A stretch of DNA of 64,000 bases from the IMG/VR virus record IMGVR_UViG_3300020202_000061, positions 248,001-312,000 of that record. One strand, 5' to 3'. Under the pieces are notes generated by a model. The model had not been told where the DNA came from. It worked only from the letters and a program-made list of their open reading frames with translations, and ran no database searches. This document shows positions 3,294-44,144 of this stretch, piece by piece. The position numbers and the translations under genes are program-made. Position 1 is the stretch's first letter. Every line of letters starts with the position of its first letter.

Positions 3294-3369
3294 TCCAGAC
3301 AACGCACCGGGTGTGCGGGCTGGCTGTTAACCAGTATCGAGCTAGGTTCGAGTCCTAGGTCTGGAGCCA
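3294..3369 (+). tRNA. atypical tRNA-Asn(GTT)
   Basis: Acceptor TCCAGAC/GTCTGGA, A8A9 connector, D-arm CGCA-CCGGGTG-TGCG, loop CTGTTAA, CCA. Confidence 0.85.
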
Positions 3370-14141: not shown

Positions 14142-14319
14142 ACATTTTTCCCACACTCCGAAAGTTATTTTTACATCGTGATCTAAAAGGTTTCTATGTT
14201 TAACGGAAACCCCTTGATGTGATCATTAAAGACCTTATGTTACGCTATATACTAAGAGGCACCGAGGGTTTCAGATGCCTCTATGGGGATTCCAAATCAA
14301 CAACGGGGTCGAACAACGA

Positions 14320-16254
14320 ATGTCTAATCTCTTCGCGGATTTCAAGACAACTTTCGAAAAAACCAGGAAAACCGAACTCTCTCTCCAGGAATACTTGGAC
14401 CTGTGCAAACAGGATCGAATGGCTTACGCCTGGGCGGTGGAGAGAATGCTGGCGGCTATCGGCGAGCCCAAGCTAGTTGACACGTCCGAGGACCCGCGCC
14501 ATTCCAGAATCTTCCTGAACCGCACCATCAAGGTGTATGACGTGTTCAAGGATTTCTACGGGATGGAGGCGACCATCGAAAAGATCGTCGCCTTCTTCAT
14601 GAAGGCCGCTCAAGGTCTGGAAGAGAAGAAGCAGGTTCTCTATCTGATGGGGCCGGTTGGATCGGCTAAGTCCTCTCTGGCAGAGCGTCTCAAGGCTCTG
14701 ATGGAGAAGATGCCGATCTACGTGCTCAAGGCGGGTGATCAAATCAGCCCGGTGTTCGAGAATCCCTTGGGTCTGTTCGATCCGAACGTGTGGAGTGATC
14801 GCCTCCAAGAGGAATACGGGATTCCTCGTCGTTATCTGACCGGGTTGATGTCGCCTTGGGCGGTAAAGCGCCTGAACGAGGACTTCGACGGGGATATCAG
14901 CAAGTTCAGTGTGGTGAAGCTCTACCCGAGCAAGCTCAAGCAGATAGCGATCTCCAAGGTCGAACCCGGTGACGAGAACAACCAAGACATTTCGTCTCTG
15001 GTCGGTAAGGTTGATATCCGCAAGCTGGCGGAGTTCTCCGCTCGTGATACCGATGCCTACAGCTACTCCGGTGGTCTCTGCTTGGCCAACCAGGGCGTGC
15101 TGGAGTTCGTCGAGATGTTCAAGGCACCGATCAAGATGCTGCATCCGATGCTCACCGCGACCCAGGAGGGCAACTACAACGGCACCGAGGCGATCTCTGG
15201 TATTCCGTTCCAGGGTGTGATTCTGGCCCACTCCAACGAATCCGAATGGGAGTCGTTCAAGAGCAACAAGAACAACGAGGCATTCCTCGACCGCATCAGC
15301 ATCATCAAGGTCCCTTACTGCCTGCGTGTCACGGACGAGACCAAAATTTACCAGAAGCTCTTGCGTGATTCGTCCCTGGACAAGGCTCCATGCACACCCA
15401 AGACGCTGGAATTGCTCTCCCAAATGAGCGTGCTTTCCCGTCTGATCTATCCGGAGAACTCTTCGATCCATTCGAAGATGAAGGTCTACGATGGTGAGAA
15501 CATCAAGGAAACCGATCCCTACGCCAAATCTGTTCAGGAATATCGTGAACTGGCCGGGGTCAACGAGGGTATGACCGGTCTCAGCACCCGCTGGGCTTTC
15601 AAGGTGCTGTCATCGGTGTTCAATTATGATCCGAACGAGATCGGCGCGAATCCGGTCCATCTGTTCCGTATCTTGGAGGACAAGATCACTGAGGAACAAT
15701 TCCCGAAGGAAGTCGAAGAGGACCTTCGTGAACACCTCCAGTGGATCAAGGCCAAGTACATCGATTTCATCGGCAATGAAATCCAGGTTGCCTACCTGGA
15801 GTCCTACACCGAATACGGCCAGAACATGTTCGACCGCTACATCGTCTATGCGGATCATTGGATCGAGGATCGGGACTATCGTGATTCCGAGACCGGCGAG
15901 ATGTACAACCGCGAAACCCTGAATAAGGAACTCGAAAAGATCGAGAAGCCCTCCGGTATCGCGAATCCCAAGGAATTCCGTAACGAGGTGGTCAACTACT
16001 CTCTCCGTTACAAGGCCAACCACGGCAAGTATCCGAGGTGGAACTCCTACGAGAAGCTCAAGGAAATCATCGAGAAGAAGATGTTCGCGAACATCTCTGA
16101 TCTCCTGCCGGTGATCTCGTTCGAGAAGAAATCCTCCGAGGAGCACGAGAAGAAGCACAAGGATTTTGTGCAGCGCATGAAAGAGAAGGGATACAGCGAG
16201 CGCCAGACCCGTATCGTCGTGGACTGGTTCATGAAGGTACAGAAGTCCAACTGA
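14320..16254 (+). CDS. prkA: PrkA/YeaG family AAA+ serine kinase
   Basis: GPVGSAKSS P-loop, EPGDENNQDIS, ANQGVLEFVEMFKAPIK.LHP, HSNESEW, NNEAFLDR; alternative start 14275. Confidence 0.97.
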   Translation: MSNLFADFKTTFEKTRKTELSLQEYLDLCKQDRMAYAWAVERMLAAIGEPKLVDTSEDPRHSRIFLNRTIKVYDVFKDFYGMEATIEKIVAFFMKAAQGLEEKKQVLYLMGPVGSAKSSLAERLKALMEKMPIYVLKAGDQISPVFENPLGLFDPNVWSDRLQEEYGIPRRYLTGLMSPWAVKRLNEDFDGDISKFSVVKLYPSKLKQIAISKVEPGDENNQDISSLVGKVDIRKLAEFSARDTDAYSYSGGLCLANQGVLEFVEMFKAPIKMLHPMLTATQEGNYNGTEAISGIPFQGVILAHSNESEWESFKSNKNNEAFLDRISIIKVPYCLRVTDETKIYQKLLRDSSLDKAPCTPKTLELLSQMSVLSRLIYPENSSIHSKMKVYDGENIKETDPYAKSVQEYRELAGVNEGMTGLSTRWAFKVLSSVFNYDPNEIGANPVHLFRILEDKITEEQFPKEVEEDLREHLQWIKAKYIDFIGNEIQVAYLESYTEYGQNMFDRYIVYADHWIEDRDYRDSETGEMYNRETLNKELEKIEKPSGIANPKEFRNEVVNYSLRYKANHGKYPRWNSYEKLKEIIEKKMFANISDLLPVISFEKKSSEEHEKKHKDFVQRMKEKGYSERQTRIVVDWFMKVQKSN

Positions 16255-16265
16255 GGGCTATCATA

Positions 16266-17555
16266 GTGACCACGGTCATTGACAGACGTAAGACCGACCG
16301 CCAGAAGAACCTCTCCAATAGGCAGAGGTTCATCAAAAGAGCCAAGGAAGCGATCAAGAAGTCGATCCGTGGAGCCATCCTCAATAAGGATCGCTCGATC
16401 AAAGACTCATCCGGCGGTAATGTTCGAATCCCCAACAAAGGGACGACAGAGCCGAATTTCCGCAATGGAGACGGTGGTCGTAAGATCATCGTTCGTCCGG
16501 GTAATCCAGGCACTGTGCCGGGTGACAAGATTCCACGTCCCAGAAAGGATCAGACTTCGGGCCGTGGTAACAGTGATCCATCCAAAGACCCCGCTGAGTT
16601 GATGGATGAGTTCGAGTTCACGCTGACCCGTGAGGAATTTCTGGACTTCTTCTTTGAGGACCTGGAATTGCCCAACTTGGTCAAGACCGCCCTCAAAGAG
16701 GTGGTCGAGTACAAATGGTCCCGTTCGGGATTTGCCTCGGTCGGTATGCCGTCGAATCTCGACATTACCCGAACCTTCATCAATTCGATGGGTCGCCATT
16801 TCGCTCTGGCCGGAGCCTACCAGAAAAAGATCGACGAACTTCGCGCTAATGGTGGATCGGAAGAGGATATCGCGCTCTGGGAGAAGAGGAAGCGGACCAT
16901 CCCGTTCATGGATGACGTGGACCTGCGCTATCGCCTGTTTGTGAAGCAGCCCAAGCCGATCACCAAAGCGGTAATGTTCTGTCTGATGGACGTATCTGGC
17001 AGTATGGGCGAGTACGAGAAGGACTTGGCCAAGCGTTTCTTCATGCTCCTCTACATGTTTCTGGAGCGCAAATACGAGTCGGTCACCGTGGTGTTCATCC
17101 GTCATACCACCGAAGCCAAAGAGGTGGACGAGCAGGAGTTCTTCTACTCGAAAGAATCAGGTGGAACCGTGGTCAGCACGGCTCTGGAAATGACTGCTGA
17201 TCTGATTCAGCGGCGCTTCAACAGTTCAGACTACAACATCTACGTGAGCCAGTGTTCGGACGGCGACAATGCCTACGATGACAACTCCGTGTGCACCCAG
17301 ATCATCCGTGAGGATATTCTGCCTTATGTCCAGTATTTTGCGTATGTCCAGGTCGGACATCAGCGCGATGAGATGGCCAACATGTGGGGTGTGTTTGCGG
17401 GTCGTCTTGGGAACACCACGAGCACGAATTCCCTCTACGAGGTTTATAAGGAGATCGAGAAGAATACCTCCCATTTCAAGGTGAAGAACCTGAATGGTCC
17501 TGCCGACATCTACCCGGTGTTTCGCGAACTCTTTGAGAAGGACATCAAGGTATGA
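16266..17555 (+). CDS. yeaH: YeaH/YhbH (DUF444) vWA-like protein
   Basis: IDRR, NRQRF, AVMFCLMDVSGSM, FIRHT, SGGT, SDGDN. Confidence 0.96.
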   Translation: MTTVIDRRKTDRQKNLSNRQRFIKRAKEAIKKSIRGAILNKDRSIKDSSGGNVRIPNKGTTEPNFRNGDGGRKIIVRPGNPGTVPGDKIPRPRKDQTSGRGNSDPSKDPAELMDEFEFTLTREEFLDFFFEDLELPNLVKTALKEVVEYKWSRSGFASVGMPSNLDITRTFINSMGRHFALAGAYQKKIDELRANGGSEEDIALWEKRKRTIPFMDDVDLRYRLFVKQPKPITKAVMFCLMDVSGSMGEYEKDLAKRFFMLLYMFLERKYESVTVVFIRHTTEAKEVDEQEFFYSKESGGTVVSTALEMTADLIQRRFNSSDYNIYVSQCSDGDNAYDDNSVCTQIIREDILPYVQYFAYVQVGHQRDEMANMWGVFAGRLGNTTSTNSLYEVYKEIEKNTSHFKVKNLNGPADIYPVFRELFEKDIKV

Positions 17556-19042
17556 GCCTGCTCTGGAATGATAATGAATGGACTTTCCCGCTCATCGACA
17601 AGGTCTACAAGGAGATCGAGCAGATCGGCGTGGGTGAGATGGGTCTGGACATCTTCCCGAATCAGATCGAGGTCATCAGCAGTGATCAGATGCTGGACGC
17701 TTATGCAAGCCATGCCATGCCAGTCATGTATAAGCACTGGTCCTTTGGCAAGTCGTATTCGGTCAACAAGAAACTCTATGAGAACGGTCAGCAGGGTCTG
17801 GCCTACGAGGTCGTAATCAACTCGAATCCCTGCATTGCCTATCTCATGGAGGACAACACCATGACCATGCAGGCTTTGGTCATGGCCCATGCCAGCATCG
17901 GTCACAACAACTTCTTCAAGACTAACTACCTGTTCCAGCAGTGGACCGATCCGGATGGGATCATCGACTACCTGATCTTCGCCAAGAATTATGTGGCGAA
18001 GTGTGAGGAGCGATACGGTGCCGAACGAGTCGAGGAAGTTCTCGATTCCTGTCACGCTCTCATGGACCAGGGTATGGACCGCTTTAAGCGAGCCCGCAAA
18101 CGTTCCCGTCAGGAGGAGAAGCTCCGTGCGGCCGAACGTGAAGCCTATCACCAAAGTCGTGTGAGTGAGCTTTGGCCGGACACCTGGAAGTCCGAGACCC
18201 CGGCCCAGAAGGAAGAACGCAAGAAGCGGATTCTTCCGGAGCCCGAGGACAACATCCTCTACTTCATCGAGAAGAACTCGCCGATCCTGGAGCCGTGGGA
18301 ACGAGAGATCGTTCGTATCGTCCGTAAGGTATCGCAGTATTTCTGGCCTCAGATGCAGACCCAGGTCGGTAATGAGGGCTGGGCCACCCATACCCATTAC
18401 TTCATTATGAATCGTCTCTACGAGAAGGGTCTGATCTCGGACGGTTCTCTGTTGGAGTTCTTCAAGTCCCACACGGGCGTTATCGCGCAGTATCGCATGC
18501 AGCGTCTGAACCCGTACTGCCTGGGATTCAACATTTTCCGCGACATCAAGCGTATGTGCGAGAAACCCACCGATGAGGATCGTGAATGGTTCCCCGATCT
18601 GGTCGGGATGAACTGGCTGGAAGCCGCGAAGGACGCGCGTGAGAACTACAAGGATGAGAGCCTGATCCTCCAGTACCTCAGCCCCAAGGTGATCCGCGAT
18701 CTTAAGCTTTTCTCGATCCTGGATGATTACGGCACGGACTCGATGAACTATATCGTCCAGAACATCCACGACCGGGAAGGCTACAAGGAAGTTCGTCGAT
18801 CCCTCTCTCGCAACTACGACATCAACATGAGAATTCCACAGATTCAGGTGTCGGATGTCAATGTGGATGGGGATCGCAAACTGATCCTTCGCCATACCCG
18901 TCACAACTATGTGCCGCTGGATCAGGCCGATCTCAAGGAAACTCTCCTCCATGTGAGGCGTCTCTGGGGGTTTGCGGTGCGTCTGGACTTCTACAATCCC
19001 GGCGCGGTCAGTCCCACGGATTGGGTAGCGGTGGGTGAATAA
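17552..19042 (+). CDS. spoVR: SpoVR/YcgB family protein
   Basis: HWSFGK, LAYEVVINSNPCIAYLME.N, AH...GHN.FFK.N, NEGWA, NPY.LG. Confidence 0.96.
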   Translation: MSLLWNDNEWTFPLIDKVYKEIEQIGVGEMGLDIFPNQIEVISSDQMLDAYASHAMPVMYKHWSFGKSYSVNKKLYENGQQGLAYEVVINSNPCIAYLMEDNTMTMQALVMAHASIGHNNFFKTNYLFQQWTDPDGIIDYLIFAKNYVAKCEERYGAERVEEVLDSCHALMDQGMDRFKRARKRSRQEEKLRAAEREAYHQSRVSELWPDTWKSETPAQKEERKKRILPEPEDNILYFIEKNSPILEPWEREIVRIVRKVSQYFWPQMQTQVGNEGWATHTHYFIMNRLYEKGLISDGSLLEFFKSHTGVIAQYRMQRLNPYCLGFNIFRDIKRMCEKPTDEDREWFPDLVGMNWLEAAKDARENYKDESLILQYLSPKVIRDLKLFSILDDYGTDSMNYIVQNIHDREGYKEVRRSLSRNYDINMRIPQIQVSDVNVDGDRKLILRHTRHNYVPLDQADLKETLLHVRRLWGFAVRLDFYNPGAVSPTDWVAVGE

Positions 19043-23042: not shown

Positions 23043-23192
23043 ATGGTAGAACGAGGCGACAAGATCACCCTGAAAGAGGCGATTGCGGAAGCGCAACGCG
23101 GAACTCTGAAACAGCGAGTCGCCCGACATCGCAAACGCCTGAAACGCAAGTATGGACTCGGACCCAAGCCGAAACGCTCCAAAACCCCTTGA
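23043..23192 (+). CDS. small basic protein (49 aa)
   Basis: MVERGDKIT...RHRKRLKRKYG...TP*. Confidence 0.55.
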   Translation: MVERGDKITLKEAIAEAQRGTLKQRVARHRKRLKRKYGLGPKPKRSKTP

Positions 23193-23217
23193 CATCCTCG
23201 GGGTTATCCTCTAAATA
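23189..23217 (+). promoter_or_regulatory. tRNA promoter
   Basis: TTGACA-N17-TAAATA. Confidence 0.75.
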
Positions 23218-23226
23218 CCCCGTTAT

Positions 23227-23312
23227 GCCGGGATGGCTGAGTGGTCGAAAGCAGGCGTTTCGTAAGCGTCCGAAGCAATTCCTCGCAGGTTCGAATCCTG
23301 TTCCCGGCTCCA
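23227..23312 (+). tRNA. tRNA-Thr(CGT) with long variable arm
   Basis: Acceptor GCCGGGA/TCCCGGC, loop TTCGTAA, 14-nt variable region CGAAGCAATTCCTC, U73, CCA. Confidence 0.85.
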
Positions 23313-23450
23313 ATCCATGATCATCAGGATCAAATCCCCCATATTGTTGCGGATTTTCGGTTGGAATAATCCAACCCTGCCGAGCCACGTCACGGCCAGT
23401 CATCGGCTGTGGTGGTTCTGGCTGCTCCGGCGTGACAAAAGGAAACGCAA

Positions 23451-23975
23451 ATGAACGTGATCAAACCACCGCGTCCACTGACAGGGATTGATGAGTTTTT
23501 ACCCATCTTGTTCCTGGCCGGGACCATCGACATGGGCGATTCCGTGGATTGGCAGGCTGATACCGCCACCCGTCTCAAGCAGTATCCGGGCACCATCCTG
23601 AATCCGCGTCGTGACGCCTGGGACAAGTCCTGGAACCAGGACATTAACAATCCTGAGTTTGCGTATCAGGTCAATTGGGAACTCGATGGTCTGGACATGG
23701 CCACGCTGATCCTGATCAACTTCGAACCGGATTCGAAGTCCCCGATCTCATTGTTGGAGCTAGGGCTCCACGCGAATGACCGTGGTCTGATCGTGCGCTG
23801 CCCCAAGGGCTATTGGCGTAAGGGTAACGTGGACATCGTCTGCGCCCGCCATCGTGTGCCGGTCTATGAGGACCTGGATCAAGCCGTGGCCGAGATCACG
23901 GTGCGTCTGCAAGCCCAACAGAAATCAATTACCAGTTTCTACCACCAGATGGCCGTGGACACAGGTCAGGCATAG
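23451..23975 (+). CDS. nucleoside 2-deoxyribosyltransferase-like protein
   Basis: FLAGTID, WQ, LNPRR..WD, QVNWE, SPISLLELG, YWRKGNV. Confidence 0.88.
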   Translation: MNVIKPPRPLTGIDEFLPILFLAGTIDMGDSVDWQADTATRLKQYPGTILNPRRDAWDKSWNQDINNPEFAYQVNWELDGLDMATLILINFEPDSKSPISLLELGLHANDRGLIVRCPKGYWRKGNVDIVCARHRVPVYEDLDQAVAEITVRLQAQQKSITSFYHQMAVDTGQA

Positions 23976-24940
23976 ACCTCGGCATCGTGATTCGGTGCGG
24001 TGTCGAAGATCGACAACTCCGTGATCGTCTTGAGCACGGTCAGACCGAGGTCCTCTCTCAGGTGATAGAGCATGGTCTTGAGGTTGTCATCGTAGGCCGA
24101 CTTCGTGATTCCCGCGTGCCTATAGGTGAGGATCAGCGGAGCGTTCTGCTTGGCACGGTTGACCGACATGAACAGGGCGTAGCGTTCCTGATCTTCATCC
24201 TTGAAGGAGAGATCGACAGCCTGTCGGATGATATCCTCCGCTCCGGGCGTGACGATCTCGATATGGGTTTCCAGATACACACCGGGCTCTCCGCCCACGG
24301 GCTTCCCCTCGGTCTCTAACTGCTTGATGATGGGATGCCAGGGTAGAGTCTCGATCTTTTGTCGAACCACATTGAGCATGGTATGGCGAGTGAGATCGTA
24401 GACCAGCTTCGTCATCACATCCATGGCTTCCTGCTGGGTTCCGAACACCACCTTCGAACACATCACATCGGCCTTGAACGGGTCATACCCACGAAGCACA
24501 TGATAGGGCTCGATATCCAGGCATTTCATCTCGTTTCGGAAACAGAAGTCTCGGAACGCAAATAACACCTCTTCGTGATTCAACACTTCCGAACCCACCG
24601 TGATGTGAATCTCGAACGGGATGGGAAACTTGACGGTGCCTTCCTGTGCCTGTAAACCGCTCCACTTATTCATTTTTGTGCGAAGCATGTCGTCGAGGTC
24701 TTGATCGTTGAACCCGAGCGAGTATCCGATGCTGAGTGCGGCCAGGATCACATCCGCAACTTCATCCAGGACGTGATGACGTGAGGTCAATCGGTGCAGG
24801 GTGTCGGGTGCGCCCTCCAGTGGGAGAATGGCCTGATTGAGTTCACCAGTTTCGGCCGCCAGCTTGTTACCCTTCTGACCGAGTGTCTTACGGTCGCGCT
24901 CGGTGAGAACCTTGATGAAATCCAGAGTTTCCTGACGCAT
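23966..24940 (-). CDS. MazG-like NTP pyrophosphohydrolase fused to an unknown domain
   Basis: ETGEL...DEVADVIL; C-terminal FEIHITV, RQKIE, LETHI. Confidence 0.75.
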   Translation of the reverse strand: MRQETLDFIKVLTERDRKTLGQKGNKLAAETGELNQAILPLEGAPDTLHRLTSRHHVLDEVADVILAALSIGYSLGFNDQDLDDMLRTKMNKWSGLQAQEGTVKFPIPFEIHITVGSEVLNHEEVLFAFRDFCFRNEMKCLDIEPYHVLRGYDPFKADVMCSKVVFGTQQEAMDVMTKLVYDLTRHTMLNVVRQKIETLPWHPIIKQLETEGKPVGGEPGVYLETHIEIVTPGAEDIIRQAVDLSFKDEDQERYALFMSVNRAKQNAPLILTYRHAGITKSAYDDNLKTMLYHLREDLGLTVLKTITELSIFDTAPNHDAEVYA

Positions 24941-25048
24941 ATTTGTTTCCCCTTCTGGAGGAAACTGTTCGAAACTCTCGAAGAGTCAAGTTGACGCCTA
25001 GGGATTTCATCTGATAGGATCGGAATTCAACAATTGGGGGAGGTTCAA

Positions 25049-25225
25049 ATGGAGCTTCAAGGCGGGGTTCGTGTTCGCACCCGAAACGGTGCGTACCTGA
25101 TCGAGCAGGGCAACACCACCAGGATAGTCAAGTTGAAACCGGGCGAATCCGTCGAGGTTGTTCCGGGTTTCACCATCTCGGCTCCGGCCGAGATCGACGT
25201 GGTGATCCATGAGGCTCATCAATGA
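25049..25225 (+). CDS. hypothetical protein
   Basis: SD GGAGG before ATG. Confidence 0.65.
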   Translation: MELQGGVRVRTRNGAYLIEQGNTTRIVKLKPGESVEVVPGFTISAPAEIDVVIHEAHQ

Positions 25226-25449
25226 AACGACCCCAGACGTGGGTCATCCTGGGTCTGATCGGTGCGATTGCGGTCTACCTCTATCAGAGCCAGAACAGTT
25301 ACATGCTGGACCCCGACAACATCCGCTATACGCGTGATTCCCGCACTGGACTCTGCTACGCCTATGTGGGAACCAGCCTCGGCTTTCAGAAATCCGTGGG
25401 ACTGACCCAGGTTCCGTGCTCAGTTCTGACGGACCAGAGCAGCCGCTGA
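25222..25449 (+). CDS. small membrane-anchored protein
   Basis: N-terminal TM; Y..D.RTGLCYA...LT.VPC motif. Confidence 0.75.
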   Translation: MKRPQTWVILGLIGAIAVYLYQSQNSYMLDPDNIRYTRDSRTGLCYAYVGTSLGFQKSVGLTQVPCSVLTDQSSR

Positions 25450-26090
25450 TCGAGTATCTGGCACGGACTTATTGATGGTCCCGTTGGGCTGATGTATCTC
25501 AAACACAAAACCTACGGCTGATTCTTCCAGATACTGGATTAACTGGATGAGGACCTTCTTCACCTGGGGTGTAATCTTACCCTGAATGAACTCCAGATCG
25601 AGTTCACCACGAGTCGTATAGATGCCACGAACCCAGCCATGCTCCATGGCAATACGGTTCCAATCGGTGCCATCCTCGTTGTAGTCGTCATCTCCGTATC
25701 CGAATGCCTGAAATGCCGCATCCTCGTGGTGACCAGCCGGAGGAACCCAACCGTATGTTCCCTGCGCGGTAATCCAAAACATACCATGGTCCATGACACG
25801 ATGGATATCCTCGAACCCAGATTGCGCAATCTGACGGTCGTGCCAATCAACTCCTCCCAATGCGGCGATGCGCCTTTCGAGTTGAATGATCTTTCGAGTT
25901 GAATGATCATTGATTTGTAGTAGTCGATCTTGTTCTGATCGCGTGTTGGTATGATCTTCTCGATCATCTCACTACGATACGCTCGCAGCGCGTTTTTGAT
26001 CACGGCTTCATCCTCCCGCCTCAGAATTTCCTGAAAGGTTGGACGATTAGGCAAAAACTGTTCGGTTAGGTCACGAAGTTCCATGCTCAT
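25420..26090 (-). pseudogene. late gene split by a 17-bp tandem duplication
   Basis: Removing one repeat copy fuses ORFs 25560..26090 and 25420..25860 (…IIQLERRIAALGGVDWH…). Confidence 0.8.
25874..25907. repeat. perfect 17-bp tandem direct repeat
   Basis: CTTTCGAGTTGAATGAT x2. Confidence 0.95.
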
Positions 26091-26134
26091 ATTTATGCTT
26101 GAAACCCCAGGGTAAATCCGCTAAGTATTCCCCG

Positions 26135-26455
26135 ATGCGGTATAGCCTTTTCCTGGACGACGAACGACATCCTCCTGCCGGACGGTGGGAGATCGCCCGT
26201 ACTGTGGCCCAGGCCATCGAAATCGTCAAACAAAAGGGATTTCCGCAGTTCGTGAGCTTTGACCACGATCTGGGGTATGATGCCAACCTGGGTCTGCAAA
26301 GGACCGGTATGGACTTCGCCCGCTGGCTGGTGGAGCTTGATCTCGAAACCAACCGAATGCCGGACGGTTTCCAGTACTACGTTCACTCTCAGAATCCCGT
26401 GGGTGTAGAAAACATCCGTGGTCTACTGGATTGCTATCTGAGAGTGCGCGGATGA
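26135..26455 (+). CDS. cyclic-phosphate-processing receiver domain protein
   Basis: LFLDDER.P, SFDHDLG, TGMDFA.WL, HSQNPVG. Confidence 0.85.
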   Translation: MRYSLFLDDERHPPAGRWEIARTVAQAIEIVKQKGFPQFVSFDHDLGYDANLGLQRTGMDFARWLVELDLETNRMPDGFQYYVHSQNPVGVENIRGLLDCYLRVRG

Positions 26456-26468
26456 AAGCGAGGTTATC

Positions 26469-27083
26469 ATGGGTACGCGTCATTCAATTCTGGTTCAGGT
26501 GAACGACGATTACAAGGTGGCCAATTACGGTCAATGGGATGGTTATCCGAGCGGTCAAGGAACGGGTATCCTCCATTTCCTCGCGGAGGAAATGGACCTG
26601 GAGAAGTTCACCGAAGCGGTTCGACACTGCACCGAGATCACCCATGAACGTCTTGAGGAAATCTGGCTCTCGATGGGTGCTCGCAAAGACGGTGATAGTT
26701 ACATGATGGGATCGAATGCGAGCGACAAGTTTCAGCTCGAATATCCACATCTGCACCGTGACTGTGGTTCCGACATCCTCAAGATGATCCAGGATGCGGG
26801 CGGACTCGAACTCAAAATCGACAAGACATTCCCGGCCGATTCCCTGTTCTGCGAGTGGGCCTACGTGATCGATTTGGACAAGGGCACGTTCGAGGTCTAC
26901 GAGGGCTTCAACGAAACACCCCTTGACCCGCAGGAGCGATTTGCCACCCTGGTGGGTCCGCAAGATCGTCGCAGTGAATACCACCCGTGTCGATTCAAGT
27001 ACGCATGGCCACTCTCGGCCTTGCCCACTCAGGAGGAGTTCCTCGCCATTCTGGAACCACCCGAGGAAGAGACAACGGAATAA
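26469..27083 (+). CDS. conserved phage hypothetical protein
   Basis: MGTR...YGQWDGYPSGQG...DSLFCEWAYVIDLD. Confidence 0.85.
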   Translation: MGTRHSILVQVNDDYKVANYGQWDGYPSGQGTGILHFLAEEMDLEKFTEAVRHCTEITHERLEEIWLSMGARKDGDSYMMGSNASDKFQLEYPHLHRDCGSDILKMIQDAGGLELKIDKTFPADSLFCEWAYVIDLDKGTFEVYEGFNETPLDPQERFATLVGPQDRRSEYHPCRFKYAWPLSALPTQEEFLAILEPPEEETTE

Positions 27084-27086
27084 TCT

Positions 27087-27806
27087 ATGCCTGATCAGGA
27101 CGTTCCGTATCCGGGCTGGCCCGAGTTCGAGTATGTCTGTGATAGCGCCAACTCGGGCAGTCACGGACCTGCTTTCTGCGGGCTTGGTCCGGGGCCGGAT
27201 TGTCCCTGGTGCCAGCGCAAGGTCGTGATGACGCCGGAATGGGAAGCATTCATCGCGGACACCCCAAATCGCCATCAGCGTATCGCTGAGGCCGTGCTGG
27301 GAAATCCCGAGGTCAAAGCCTCACTCCGTCGTCATTCCCGTTTCAACCGTGGTGAATCCCAGGAGCGCATGATGAATGCCGCAATCGACAGCACCGATAT
27401 TCAACCAATCGCCATCGGCACACCATCAACCAACATCACCAAGGCCGATCTTCAACGTGAGGAAGCGAAGTTCCAGCAGTTCAAGAAGGATCGCGGCATC
27501 AATAACGAGGTCGAGGCGTTGATCGCAAGCATCCAAGAGAGTCATACTGCGGCGGTGACGTTCGACGACTCCATGAAACCCTCAACCGAGGAACGCATGA
27601 ATCGCATCCGCAAGAGTCGTGCGGAAATGGCCAGCTATGATCTGGACATCGAGGCATTAACCCGACAGATCACCGATGACATCGCCGCTCGTCAGGACAA
27701 GGCCGCCGCCATCACCCGAACGGCTCAGAAAGAACTTCGTCGGATGCAACGCCGAGTGTTCTGGACCCTTGTTAAGGACACGATCATCCGCTGGTTCCGT
27801 CGATGA
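27087..27806 (+). CDS. hypothetical protein with Zn-ribbon N-terminus and coiled coil
   Basis: C...H...C...CPWC motif; helical C-terminus. Confidence 0.75.
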   Translation: MPDQDVPYPGWPEFEYVCDSANSGSHGPAFCGLGPGPDCPWCQRKVVMTPEWEAFIADTPNRHQRIAEAVLGNPEVKASLRRHSRFNRGESQERMMNAAIDSTDIQPIAIGTPSTNITKADLQREEAKFQQFKKDRGINNEVEALIASIQESHTAAVTFDDSMKPSTEERMNRIRKSRAEMASYDLDIEALTRQITDDIAARQDKAAAITRTAQKELRRMQRRVFWTLVKDTIIRWFRR

Positions 27807-27910
27807 TCACCGCTAACGATAACCACCGATCTCTGGCGGAAATCCTCAATGATATCCACACCAGAAGGCGACGTGAATCTCTGACCCAACGCGTTCTGGG
27901 AAGATTCCTC

Positions 27911-27939
27911 TTGATTTTGAGCCGGATCACGCGTAAATA
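27911..27939 (+). promoter_or_regulatory. tRNA promoter
   Basis: TTGATT-N17-TAAATA. Confidence 0.65.
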
Positions 27940-27947
27940 AGAACTGC

Positions 27948-28033
27948 GCCAGGATGGCTGAGTGGCCGAAAGCAGAGCCTTTGTAACGCTCCGGGGAAAC
28001 CCCACGCAGGTTCGAATCCTGTTCCTGGCTCCA
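27948..28033 (+). tRNA. tRNA-Thr(TGT) with long variable arm
   Basis: Acceptor GCCAGGA/TCCTGGC, loop TTTGTAA, variable arm GGGG-AAA-CCCC, U73, CCA. Confidence 0.87.
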
Positions 28034-28041
28034 ATATTCCC

Positions 28042-28070
28042 TTGACATATCCTAGGGTTTCTGGTAGACT
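28042..28070 (+). promoter_or_regulatory. early sigma70-like promoter
   Basis: TTGACA-TATCCTAGGGTTTCTGG-TAGACT. Confidence 0.75.
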
Positions 28071-32598: not shown

Positions 32599-32686
32599 GG
32601 AGAGTAAACCCCTGAGGTTGGGGTGCCGCCTGGAAAGCGGTCAGGACCTGAAAGGGTCTACGGTTCGAGTCCGTTGCTCTCCTCCA
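32599..32686 (+). tRNA. 8/4-fold tRNA-Ser(GGA), allo-tRNA-like
   Basis: 8-bp acceptor GGAGAGTA/TGCTCTCC, 4-bp T-stem ACGG/CCGT, long V-arm, loop CTGGAAA, U73, CCA. Confidence 0.8.
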
Positions 32687-44068: not shown

Positions 44069-44144
44069 GCCAGATTACAGTTTAGTGGTAGAACACGCGG
44101 CCGATAACCGTGGAGCGGGGGTTCGATTCCCTCATCTGGCACCA
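44069..44144 (+). tRNA. atypical tRNA-Ile(GAT) with C33
   Basis: Loop CCGATAA, 4-nt acceptor/D connector, CCA. Confidence 0.75.

What the first reader, a model, noticed from the sequence alone, without database searches (positions are those of the whole stretch)
23227..28033. Two threonine-anticodon tRNAs with class II long variable arms
Seen: 23227-23312 (CGT) and 27948-28033 (TGT) are paralogous 86-nt tRNAs, each with its own promoter. They have a Thr-type G1-C72/C2-G71 acceptor, U73, a Ser/Tyr/Leu-type D-arm (TGGCTGAGTGG.CGAAAGC) and a paired 14-nt V-arm. Established: bacterial long V-arms are confined to Ser, Leu, Tyr and Sec, and SerRS recognises the V-arm. Inference: either nuclease-resistant chimeric tRNA-Thr, or missense tRNAs inserting another residue at ACA/ACG codons.
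Basis: partly seen in the sequence, partly recalled or inferred. Interest (0 to 1): 0.78.

Follow-up and report, generated by a model that had tools for sequence, protein, structure and literature searches.

The report
Long-armed threonine tRNAs in a phage
A soil jumbo phage carries two working-looking threonine tRNAs that have the extra long arm normally reserved for serine, leucine and tyrosine tRNAs, and they belong to a wider, apparently undescribed family that is also the chromosomal ACA-reading threonine tRNA of a whole bacterial phylum (Eremiobacterota).

Summary
ARAGORN and Rfam-nt tRNAs with CGT and TGT anticodons and 14-nt paired variable arms at exactly the stated coordinates.

Pattern scans found the same architecture in:
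- at least 12 unrelated phage contigs;
- 39 species-level Eremiobacterota (Vulcanimicrobiota) genomes, where it is chromosomal;
- scattered other MAGs.

The shared architecture is a Ser-type 3-bp D-stem, a 7–15-nt V-region, an NGU anticodon, G1-C72/C2-G71 and usually U73.

Several results point to threonine charging:
- G1-C72 and C2-G71 are invariant in 40 of 40 unique sequences, while the other acceptor pairs covary.
- G2-C71 and G73, the serine determinants, are absent. A73, needed for Leu and Tyr, is also absent.
- ACA in Eremiobacterota, and ACA and ACG in the phage, evolve as Thr codons.
- A sister phage keeps the CGT gene with compensatory changes. At the TGT site, behind an identical promoter, it carries an ordinary 75-nt tRNA-Thr(UGU).

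Best reading: these are genuine Thr isoacceptors. The missense reading is not supported, and nuclease resistance was not tested. I found no prior description in the searchable literature.

The parts
23189..23217 (+). Promoter-like element TTGACA-N17-TAAATA, ending 9 nt before the tRNA 5' end
   Evidence: Motif search: the same TTGAC(A/T)-N17-TAAATA motif precedes 7 tRNA units in the window. The motif is conserved in the sister phage although the spacer has diverged. The strict sigma-70 scan does not flag it because the second hexamer ends in A.
23227..23312 (+). tRNA-Thr(CGU), 86 nt including CCA. The anticodon is at 23261-23263 and the 14-nt V-arm at 23271-23284 (3-bp stem GAA/TTC with a GCAA loop). 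Identity positions: G1-C72, C2-G71, G4-C69, G5-C68, U73.
   Evidence: ARAGORN; Rfam 51.8 bits; parse. The ortholog in the sister phage differs by two double compensatory changes, at pairs 6-67 and 7-66, plus one V-arm base.
27911..27939 (+). Promoter-like element TTGATT-N17-TAAATA, ending 8 nt before the tRNA 5' end
   Evidence: The sister phage has 38 identical bases here, up to and including the TAAATA.
27948..28033 (+). tRNA-Thr(UGU), 86 nt including CCA. The anticodon is at 27982-27984 and the 14-nt V-arm at 27992-28005 (GGG/CCC stem with a GAAA loop, or 4 bp with AAA). Identity positions: G1-C72, C2-G71, A4-U69, G5-C68, U73. There is a C31·C39 mismatch.
   Evidence: ARAGORN; Rfam 49.5 bits; parse. 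In the sister phage the same slot holds a 75-nt class I tRNA-Thr(UGU).
28042..28070 (+). Sigma-70-like promoter TTGACA-17-TAGACT of the next gene. It marks the downstream edge of the tRNA cassette.
   Evidence: Promoter scan, 10 of 12 matches. Conserved in the sister phage immediately after the tRNA 3' end.

Best explanation
Both genes are functional threonine isoacceptors. One reads ACG (CGU). The other (UGU) reads ACA and, depending on the U34 modification, further ACN codons. They are transcribed from the phage's own tRNA-type promoters and charged by the host threonyl-tRNA synthetase.

Recognition would rest on what bacterial ThrRS is known to read: the top of the acceptor stem (G1-C72, C2-G71, and G4-C69/G5-C68) and anticodon bases G35 and U36. 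The class II-like body, meaning the 3-bp D-stem, long D-loop and short hairpin V-arm, is a lineage trait of a distinct long-arm tRNA-Thr family. It is not a signal for SerRS. The family lacks G2-C71 and G73, carries the SerRS antideterminant C2-G71, and has a V-stem of only 2-4 bp followed by 3-4 unpaired bases. It also lacks the A73 required by LeuRS and TyrRS.

The family is the chromosomal tRNA-Thr(UGU) of Eremiobacterota and has spread among unrelated phages. In this phage lineage it is interchangeable with an ordinary class I tRNA-Thr(UGU).

Shown here: the structure, the conservation pattern, the distribution, the codon behaviour and the positional swap. Inferred: charging by ThrRS, rejection by SerRS, and the decoding range.
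For: 1. Both are real tRNAs. Across 40 unique family members the cloverleaf is 96.9% paired, against 75% in shuffles, and 16 pairs show compensatory changes.

2. G1-C72 and C2-G71 are invariant in 40 of 40, while acceptor pairs 3-7 covary. G35, U36 and A37 are invariant. These are the bacterial Thr determinants listed in PMC9976931 Table 1.

3. All ~50 phage tRNA-Ser(GCU/ACU) genes that share the identical 21-nt D-arm have G73 and 16-26-nt V-arms, and all but three (A1 in place of G1) have G1-C72/G2-C71. Only the NGU-anticodon genes have C2-G71, U73 and a 14-nt arm. C2-G71 is a documented negative element against E. coli SerRS. The window's own tRNA-Ser(CGA) and tRNA-Ser(UGA) have G2-C71 and G73.

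4. Class I and long-arm tRNA-Thr genes in the same genome share G1-C72 and C2-G71, and usually C3-G70 and U73: L064, L071, L095, L033 and the sister phage.

5. In 39 Eremiobacterota genomes the gene is chromosomal, on contigs up to 5.6 Mb. In 4 of the 8 Eremiobacterota loci scanned it sits beside the tRNA-Tyr/Gly cluster, joined by tRNA-Thr(GGU) in one of them. There, ACA aligns opposite Thr 42% and Ser 10%. This matches ACC, ACT and ACG and is unlike Ser codons.

6. Between the window and its sister phage, ACA changes to Thr 60% and Ser 7%, and ACG to Thr 49% and Ser 10%.

7. The sister phage (409 kb, PrkA 92% identical) keeps the CGU gene with two double compensatory changes. At the UGU site it has a 75-nt class I tRNA-Thr(UGU) between identical flanks.

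8. In several phage arrays the long-arm gene is the only tRNA-Thr(UGU) (L065, L068, L119).
Against: - There is no biochemical evidence of charging for any family member.
- The V-arm hairpin is maintained by compensatory changes, so something selects for it. That could be a protein partner, and SerRS of an unknown host cannot be excluded. The review notes that G73 is dispensable for E. coli SerRS on unmodified transcripts in vitro.
- The UGU copy lacks G4-C69 and has a C31·C39 mismatch.
- I could not scan whole Eremiobacterota genomes, so a second, class I tRNA-Thr(UGU) there is not excluded.
- The host of this phage is unknown.
Confidence: 0.8

Rival explanations
1. Missense tRNAs. SerRS recognises the long variable arm and Ser-type core regardless of the anticodon, so these tRNAs insert serine at ACG and ACA codons, giving deliberate or tolerated Thr-to-Ser mistranslation of host or phage proteins.
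For: [quoted passage not shown] The D-arm 21-mer is otherwise found only in tRNA-Ser(GCU/ACU) in IMG/VR, apart from one GTT-anticodon gene in L042. C11-G24 is present in both genes, and G30-C40 in the CGU copy. The V-arm hairpin is conserved. Natural Ser-bodied tRNAs with a GGT anticodon do exist in metagenomes (L105, L153, L154, L163, L165), so this kind of tRNA is not impossible.
Against: Those Ser-bodied GGT tRNAs keep G2-C71, G73 and 5-6-bp V-stems. The window genes have lost exactly these features and carry the SerRS antideterminant C2-G71. G1-C72 and C2-G71 are invariant across the family. ACA and ACG evolve as Thr codons in the phage and in Eremiobacterota. A phylum-wide chromosomal gene cannot be a mistranslator without a code change, and none is seen. 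A class I tRNA-Thr occupies the same slot in the sister phage. From my own knowledge, not tested here: the ThrRS editing domain hydrolyses Ser-tRNA-Thr, so any Ser mischarge on a ThrRS-bound tRNA would tend to be cleared.
Confidence: 0.05
2. Counter-defence isoacceptors. The tRNAs are Thr-charged, but the unusual body is kept in phages because it escapes a host tRNA-targeting defence (an anticodon nuclease, acceptor-modifying toxin or similar) that disables ordinary tRNA-Thr. This adds a selective reason to the best explanation rather than replacing it.
For: Phage tRNAs are known to rescue infection from tRNA-targeting defences (PMC10264068; the PARIS preprint 10.1101/2024.01.02.573894, listed). 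A toxSAS that targets tRNA-Thr and tRNA-Gly is documented (PMC11245113). Two related contigs with the same array (L055, L070) carry both a class I and a long-arm tRNA-Thr(UGU), which hints at non-redundancy. Long V-arms also recur in other class-I isotypes in phage arrays.
Against: There is no defence gene or target in evidence. The FaRel2 determinants (G1-C72, C2-G71, G4-C69, Pu5-Py68) are all retained in the CGU copy, so that toxin class would still hit it. The anticodon loops are ordinary. The same architecture is a housekeeping gene in Eremiobacterota, where counter-defence is not an explanation. The sister phage manages with a class I UGU gene.
Confidence: 0.12
3. Decaying or non-translational tRNA-like genes: pseudogenes, recombination sites, or tRNA-derived regulators with no decoding role.
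For: The UGU copy has a C31·C39 mismatch. MFE z-scores of the single sequences are unremarkable at -1.0 and -1.7. Some family members have unpaired V-regions (L064, L068, L069).
Against: All four stems are intact and CCA is encoded. The tertiary-core bases U8, A14, G15, G18, G19, C48 and the T-loop are invariant. There are compensatory changes between paralogs and between orthologs. A dedicated promoter motif is shared with the phage's other tRNAs. The family is conserved across a bacterial phylum.
Confidence: 0.03

Closest known systems
Canonical bacterial tRNA-Thr (class I, e.g. E. coli thrU/thrW products)
   Same: NGU anticodon with U33 and A37-A38. The acceptor determinants G1-C72, C2-G71 and G5-C68 are present, plus G4-C69 in the CGU copy. 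Structure is 7/5, with a standard T-arm and CCA. The long-arm gene occupies the tRNA-Thr(UGU) slot in arrays and swaps with a class I gene in the sister phage.
   Different: The D-stem is 3 bp with an 11-nt D-loop, rather than 4 bp. The hairpin V-arm is 14 nt instead of 5 nt. Overall identity to class I tRNA-Thr is only ~0.63-0.67, which is background level.
Bacterial and phage tRNA-Ser(GCU)
   Same: The 21-nt D-arm string is identical. There is a 3-bp D-stem with C11-G24, a long V-region, a similar T-arm, and the U36-A37-A38 loop context.
   Different: C2-G71 replaces G2-C71 and U73 replaces G73. The V-arm is 14 nt with 3-4 bp and 3 unpaired 3' bases, against 16-26 nt with 5-8 bp. The anticodon is NGU, not GCU. 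Whole-sequence similarity is at background level, so common descent is suggested only by the D-arm.
Type I tRNA-Leu(CAA) of Streptomyces coelicolor (PMC6614811)
   Same: [quoted passage not shown] This precedent shows that V-arm class is not locked to identity.
   Different: The direction is opposite: there a class II identity acquired a class I body. That case is also backed by aminoacylation biochemistry, which is missing here.
allo-tRNAs and tRNA-Sec-like tRNAs with sense anticodons (reviewed in PMC7609411)
   Same: Long-V-arm tRNAs from metagenomes that carry anticodons outside the Ser/Leu/Tyr set.
   Different: Those have 8/4 or 9/3 acceptor/T geometries and Ser identity elements (G73). 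The window genes have the canonical 7/5 geometry, U73 and C2-G71.
Alloacceptor-shifted tRNAs such as yeast mitochondrial tRNA-Thr(UAG), derived from tRNA-His (PMC7609411)
   Same: A tRNA body of one lineage that works with a different identity after changes in its identity elements.
   Different: Here the codon meaning is unchanged (ACR stays Thr), and the Ser ancestry is only suggested, not demonstrated.

Membership tests
tRNA (Rfam RF00005) | Cloverleaf with conserved core; score above the gathering threshold | tested here: met
   51.8 and 49.5 bits against 29. ARAGORN also calls both. In the family alignment 96.9% of cells are paired.
Bacterial tRNA-Thr (identity set, PMC9976931 Table 1) | G1-C72 and C2-G71 | tested here: met
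   Both genes have them, and they are invariant in 40 of 40 family members.
Bacterial tRNA-Thr (identity set, PMC9976931 Table 1) | G4-C69 and G5-C68 | tested here: inconclusive
   The CGU copy has both. The UGU copy has A4-U69 and G5-C68. The Eremiobacterota genes have G4-C69 and A5-U68.
Bacterial tRNA-Thr (identity set, PMC9976931 Table 1) | Anticodon G35, U36 | tested here: met
   CGU and UGU anticodons. The register is fixed by covariation of all five anticodon-stem pairs.
Bacterial tRNA-Thr | Aminoacylation by ThrRS with threonine | not testable with these tools
   The evidence is indirect only: codon behaviour and the positional swap with a class I tRNA-Thr.
Bacterial tRNA-Thr | Class I architecture (4-5-nt variable loop, 4-bp D-stem). 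This is typical of the family but is not an identity element. | tested here: not met
   14-nt V-arm and 3-bp D-stem.
Bacterial tRNA-Ser (identity set) | Discriminator G73 | tested here: not met
   U73 in both genes. It is U in 38 of 40 family members and A in 2.
Bacterial tRNA-Ser (identity set) | G2-C71 | tested here: not met
   C2-G71 in all cases. This pair is a negative element for E. coli SerRS.
Bacterial tRNA-Ser (identity set) | Large variable region of Ser type, and C11-G24 | tested here: inconclusive
   C11-G24 is present. The V-arm is present but short, at 14 nt with 3-4 bp and 3 unpaired 3' bases. tRNA-Ser genes with the same D-arm have 16-26 nt.
Bacterial tRNA-Leu / tRNA-Tyr | Discriminator A73 (plus G34 and U35 for Tyr) | tested here: not met
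   U73. The anticodon is NGU in the covariation-supported register.
tRNA-Sec / allo-tRNA | 13-bp acceptor domain (8/5, 9/4, 8/4 or 9/3) and G73 | tested here: not met
   7-bp acceptor plus 5-bp T-stem, with U73.
Long-arm tRNA-Thr family (delimited here) | Ser-type D-arm (GCYGAG.GG..GAARGC), NGU anticodon, G1-C72/C2-G71, usually U73, V-region of 7-15 nt ending in C48 | tested here: met
   Both window genes align with 38 other unique members from phages, Eremiobacterota and other MAGs.

The most novel reading that the evidence does not exclude
Threonine is a further class II tRNA identity in Bacteria. A long-arm tRNA-Thr lineage arose from a tRNA-Ser(GCU)-like gene by an identity switch: the anticodon changed from GCU to NGU, G2-C71 changed to C2-G71, G73 changed to U73, and the V-arm shortened. 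It became the fixed ACA decoder of the phylum Eremiobacterota and is mobilised among soil phages. In phages it may be retained because its odd body escapes a tRNA-Thr-directed host defence. The Ser-bodied GGU-anticodon tRNAs seen in metagenomes would then be living intermediates of such a switch.
Probability: 0.3. Interest if true: 0.8.

Novelty: new variant of a known kind. Interest (0 to 1): 0.62.

Why it matters
The textbook rule is that only Ser, Leu, bacterial Tyr and Sec tRNAs carry a long variable arm, and that SerRS uses that arm as its main handle. A family of long-arm tRNAs that by all indirect evidence accept threonine breaks the first rule. It also gives a natural test bed for the second. 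How does SerRS reject a class II tRNA? How does ThrRS, a class IIa enzyme that faces the variable side of the tRNA, accommodate an extra hairpin?

The family also matters for annotation. Isotype calls made from structure would mislabel these genes, and calls made from the anticodon would hide how unusual they are. It is relevant to synthetic biology, where class II scaffolds are used as orthogonal tRNAs. It offers a possible real example of a tRNA identity switch between amino acids that are neighbours in the code (AGY Ser and ACN Thr).

For phage biology, the precise cassette-like swap of a class I for a long-arm tRNA behind an unchanged promoter shows how tRNA complements turn over.

Tried and rejected
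1. Alternative anticodon register giving GUA (Tyr). Both loops contain GTAA. Rejected: the shifted stems do not pair, all five anticodon-stem pairs covary in the canonical register, and U33 and A37 are invariant.

2. Derivation from the phage's own tRNA-Ser genes. The alignment shows no special similarity.

3. Close relatives among deposited phages. None were found. There were only short hits, none over the tRNAs.

4. The strict sigma-70 scan did not flag the tRNA promoters. A custom motif search did.

5. Whole-sequence similarity as a way to show Ser ancestry. It gave only background similarity to every isotype. The Ser-origin claim is therefore downgraded to 'suggested by the D-arm'.

6. Search for a nearby aaRS or tRNA-repair gene by Pfam on 20 ORFs. 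None was found.

7. Six literature searches with different phrasings, plus a seventh for the broader phage pattern, found no description of a long-arm tRNA-Thr. The library lacks most subscription-journal papers, so this is not proof of novelty.

8. The PrkA homolog search was meant for a codon-column test, but PrkA has only 5 ACR codons. The search instead revealed the sister phage, which was used for the codon test.

9. RNA evidence. Only two DNA soil-metagenome runs hold the sequence.

Full report
**Observation.** ARAGORN finds 18 tRNA genes in the window. They include tRNA-Thr(cgt) at 23227-23312 and tRNA-Thr(tgt) at 27948-28033, both on the + strand with CCA encoded. Rfam's tRNA model scores them 51.8 and 49.5 bits against a threshold of 29.

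Read directly, each gene has:
- a 7-bp acceptor stem starting G1-C72, C2-G71, C3-G70;
- discriminator U73;
- the D-arm TGGCTGAGTGG(T/C)CGAAAGC, with a 3-bp stem;
- a 5-bp anticodon stem and the loop UU-NGU-AA;
- a 14-nt variable region that forms a 3-4-bp hairpin (GAA[GCAA]TTC in one gene, GGG[GAAA]CCC in the other);
- a canonical T-arm.

**Promoters.** The 'own promoter' claim holds in modified form. The strict sigma-70 scan missed both sites. A motif TTGAC(A/T)-N17-TAAATA, however, ends 8-10 nt before seven tRNA units of the window: Asn, Ile-Leu, Trp, Thr-CGT, Thr-TGT, the Ser cluster and the Arg cluster.

**What the window is.** It is 100% identical to IMG/VR contig UViG_3300020202_000061, also recorded as Ga0196964_10000008, which is 347,504 bp long. 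The source is a soil metagenome. The window encodes a family-B DNA polymerase, a PrkA/DUF444/SpoVR trio and a nucleoside deoxyribosyltransferase-like protein. No aaRS or tRNA-repair gene was found among the 20 ORFs scanned. It has no close relative among deposited phages.

**The D-arm points to tRNA-Ser, but the identity positions do not.** The exact 21-nt D-arm string occurs in 53 stretches of IMG/VR. Apart from this phage's own two genes, almost all of them are a tRNA-Ser(GCT) or tRNA-Ser(ACT), and one has a GTT anticodon. All the parsed Ser genes have discriminator G73 and V-arms of 16-26 nt, and nearly all have G1-C72/G2-C71 (three start with A1). The two window genes alone have C2-G71, U73, NGT anticodons and the shortest arm, at 14 nt.

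The identity review (PMC9976931) lists the relevant determinants:
- Bacterial Ser: G73, C72, G2-C71, R4-Y69, C11-G24, the large variable region and G30-C40.
- C2-G71 is a negative element against E. coli SerRS.
- A73 is the determinant for bacterial Leu and Tyr.
- Bacterial Thr: G1-C72, C2-G71, G4-C69, G5-C68 and the anticodon (G35, U36).

The CGU gene has all four Thr acceptor pairs. The UGU gene has three, with A4-U69 in place of G4-C69. The phage's own tRNA-Ser(CGA) and tRNA-Ser(UGA) carry G2-C71 and G73, which serves as an internal control.

**The pair belongs to a family.** A pattern requiring a Ser-type D-arm plus an NGT anticodon found nine further viral contigs. They carry 82-87-nt tRNA(TGT) genes with G1-C72 and C2-G71, and eight of the nine have U73. 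These contigs share nothing with the window except the tRNA.

The same kind of pattern on one genome per GTDB species returned 80 loci, which is the cap. Of these, 46 are real tRNAs. Thirty-nine of the loci are Eremiobacterota/Vulcanimicrobiota genomes, with taxonomy checked. They carry a nearly invariant gene: GCCGACG..., V-region about 13 nt, U73, on contigs up to 5.6 Mb. In 4 of the 8 Eremiobacterota loci scanned it sits beside the tRNA-Tyr/tRNA-Gly cluster, with tRNA-Thr(GGU) as well in one (L071). The remaining hits lie in Thiotrichales, Alcaligenaceae, Legionella, Planctomycetota, Thermoleophilia and Verrucomicrobiia MAGs.

A metagenome scan for the CGT and GGT variants added a second contig of the sister phage (L166) and an independent long-arm tRNA-Thr(CGT) (L157/L159). 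An 85-nt tRNA-Thr(TGT) with a different D-arm (L033/L049) shows that the family is wider than my pattern. The premise that bacterial long arms are confined to Ser, Leu, Tyr and Sec is therefore not correct as stated.

**Conservation pattern.** On an alignment of 40 unique members (A2), the cloverleaf is 96.9% paired, against 75.4% in shuffles. Sixteen of 23 pairs show changes on both sides. G1-C72 and C2-G71 never vary, whereas acceptor pairs 3-7 covary freely. All five anticodon-stem pairs covary. This fixes the 7-nt loop and the NGU register and excludes the GUA (Tyr) reading. U8, A14, G15, G18, G19, U33, G35, U36, A37, A38, C48 and most of the T-loop are invariant.

The V-region is 7-15 nt long. 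Most often it consists of one base, a 2-4-bp stem, a GNRA-like loop and 3-4 unpaired bases ending in C48. The stems vary in a compensatory way: CTC/GAG, CCC/GGG, GGA/TCC, ATC/GAT, GAA/TTC. A few phage members have no convincing stem.

**What the codons mean.** Among orthologous ORFs of the 39 Eremiobacterota loci, ACA aligns opposite Thr in 42% of changed positions and opposite Ser in 10%. This matches ACC (37/11), ACT (41/9) and ACG (29/12). TCN codons show Ser 30-46% and Thr 7-11% (AGC 18/12, AGT 33/10).

In the phage, Thr codon usage is ACC 56%, ACG 25%, ACT 10% and ACA 9%. Between the window and its sister phage, ACA changes to other Thr codons in 60% of cases (Ser 7%) and ACG in 49% (Ser 10%). 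That is at least as Thr-like as ACC and ACT.

**A natural swap.** A PrkA search found a 92%-identical protein on a 409,210-bp JGI contig. That contig is syntenic with the window at 67-87% nucleotide identity.
- The sister phage keeps the long-arm tRNA-Thr(CGU) at the same place, with the same promoter motif. It differs by two double compensatory changes in acceptor pairs 6-67 and 7-66 and by one V-arm base.
- At the UGU site the flanks are identical: 38 bases up to the TAAATA element, and identity resumes at ...CTCCA-ATATT and continues into the next promoter. But the cassette is a 75-nt class I tRNA-Thr(UGU) with G1-C72, C2-G71 and U73. It scores 41.8 bits in Rfam.

The two architectures are thus interchangeable in the same expression slot. 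In other genomes, long-arm and class I tRNA-Thr genes share the same acceptor identity set. In several arrays the long-arm gene is the only tRNA-Thr(UGU).

**Interpretation.** The best-supported reading is that both genes are true threonine isoacceptors of a long-arm tRNA-Thr family. The host ThrRS would charge them through the acceptor top and G35/U36. SerRS would reject them because of C2-G71, U73 and the short arm. LeuRS and TyrRS would reject them for lack of A73. None of these charging steps was tested; they are inferred from the sequence and the published identity rules.

The missense reading is not supported. A useful contrast comes from full tRNA-Ser bodies with a GGT anticodon found in a MAG and in metagenomes (L105, L153, L154, L163, L165). 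These keep G2-C71, G73 and long 5-6-bp arms, which is how a Ser-charged Thr-decoder would be expected to look.

Descent of the family from tRNA-Ser(GCU) is suggested by the D-arm alone. Whole-sequence similarity to every isotype is at background level.

The idea that the odd body protects against a tRNA-directed defence remains open but has no support. The one documented tRNA-Thr-selective toxin, FaRel2 (PMC11245113), reads G1-C72, C2-G71, G4-C69 and Pu5-Py68. The CGU gene retains all of these.

**Novelty and limits.** Six literature searches found no description of a long-arm tRNA-Thr. The nearest precedents are:
- allo-tRNAs and alloacceptor shifts (PMC7609411).

The library omits most subscription-journal papers, so prior description cannot be excluded.

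Noticed in passing
window 14275-19042 (+): A PrkA (AAA+ Ser kinase) / DUF444 / SpoVR-like trio, equivalent to the bacterial yeaG-yeaH-ycgB stress operon, sits inside the jumbo phage. PrkA is 65-67% identical to Gamma- and Alphaproteobacteria proteins. The trio is conserved in the 409-kb sister phage.
   Followed up: partly
L105 6813-6897(-); also L153, L154, L163, L165 (coordinates not resolved here): Complete tRNA-Ser bodies (G1-C72, G2-C71, G73, 5-6-bp V-stem, 85-94 nt) that carry a GGT (Thr) anticodon. They look like C35G variants of tRNA-Ser(GCU). Candidates for natural Thr-to-Ser mistranslators, or for intermediates of a Ser-to-Thr identity switch.
   Followed up: partly
L055 4735-4826; L008 2565-2655; L009 2362-2455; L013 10941-11029; L054 2963-3051; L055 112-195; L068 7025-7110 and others: Among 440 unique tRNAs in the fetched phage arrays, long genes (82 nt or more) with class-I anticodons recur: Ile(TAT) in 7 cases at 90-94 nt, Asn(GTT) 3, Trp(CCA) 3, Lys(TTT) 2, Gln(TTG) 1. 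At least the Ile(TAT) example has a class-I 4-bp D-stem plus a V-arm of about 21 nt.
   Followed up: no
L042 1663-1749 (+): A tRNA with the same Ser(GCU)-type D-arm but a GTT (Asn) anticodon and G73. It lies next to tRNAs with tca and cta (stop-reading) anticodons, which suggests a recoded phage.
   Followed up: no
L092, L100, L146, L148, L155, L158, L162, L167, L171 (pattern-hit sites): Sequences that match the 5' half of a tRNA-Ser-like gene up to ...TTTGGTAA... and then stop resembling a tRNA. Possible explanations are anticodon-loop introns or integration-site remnants.
   Followed up: no
window 32599-32686, 3294-3369, 44070-44139: The callers disagree. tRNA-Ser(GGA), which has U73 and an odd 5-bp D-stem, and the second tRNA-Asn are called by ARAGORN only. 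A 70-nt tRNA at 44070-44139 is called by Rfam only, at 41.4 bits.
   Followed up: no
L033 4680-4764; L049 2210-2294: An 85-nt tRNA-Thr(TGT) with G1-C72, C2-G71, U73 and a hairpin V-arm but a different, non-Ser D-arm. Long-arm tRNA-Thr genes are therefore more diverse than the search pattern captured.
   Followed up: partly
L095 3126-3204 (Verrucomicrobiia MAG): A 79-nt tRNA-Thr(TGT) with the Ser-type D-arm but only a 7-nt variable region, sitting beside a tRNA-Tyr/Gly/Thr(GGU) cluster. It looks like an intermediate between the class I and long-arm forms.
   Followed up: no
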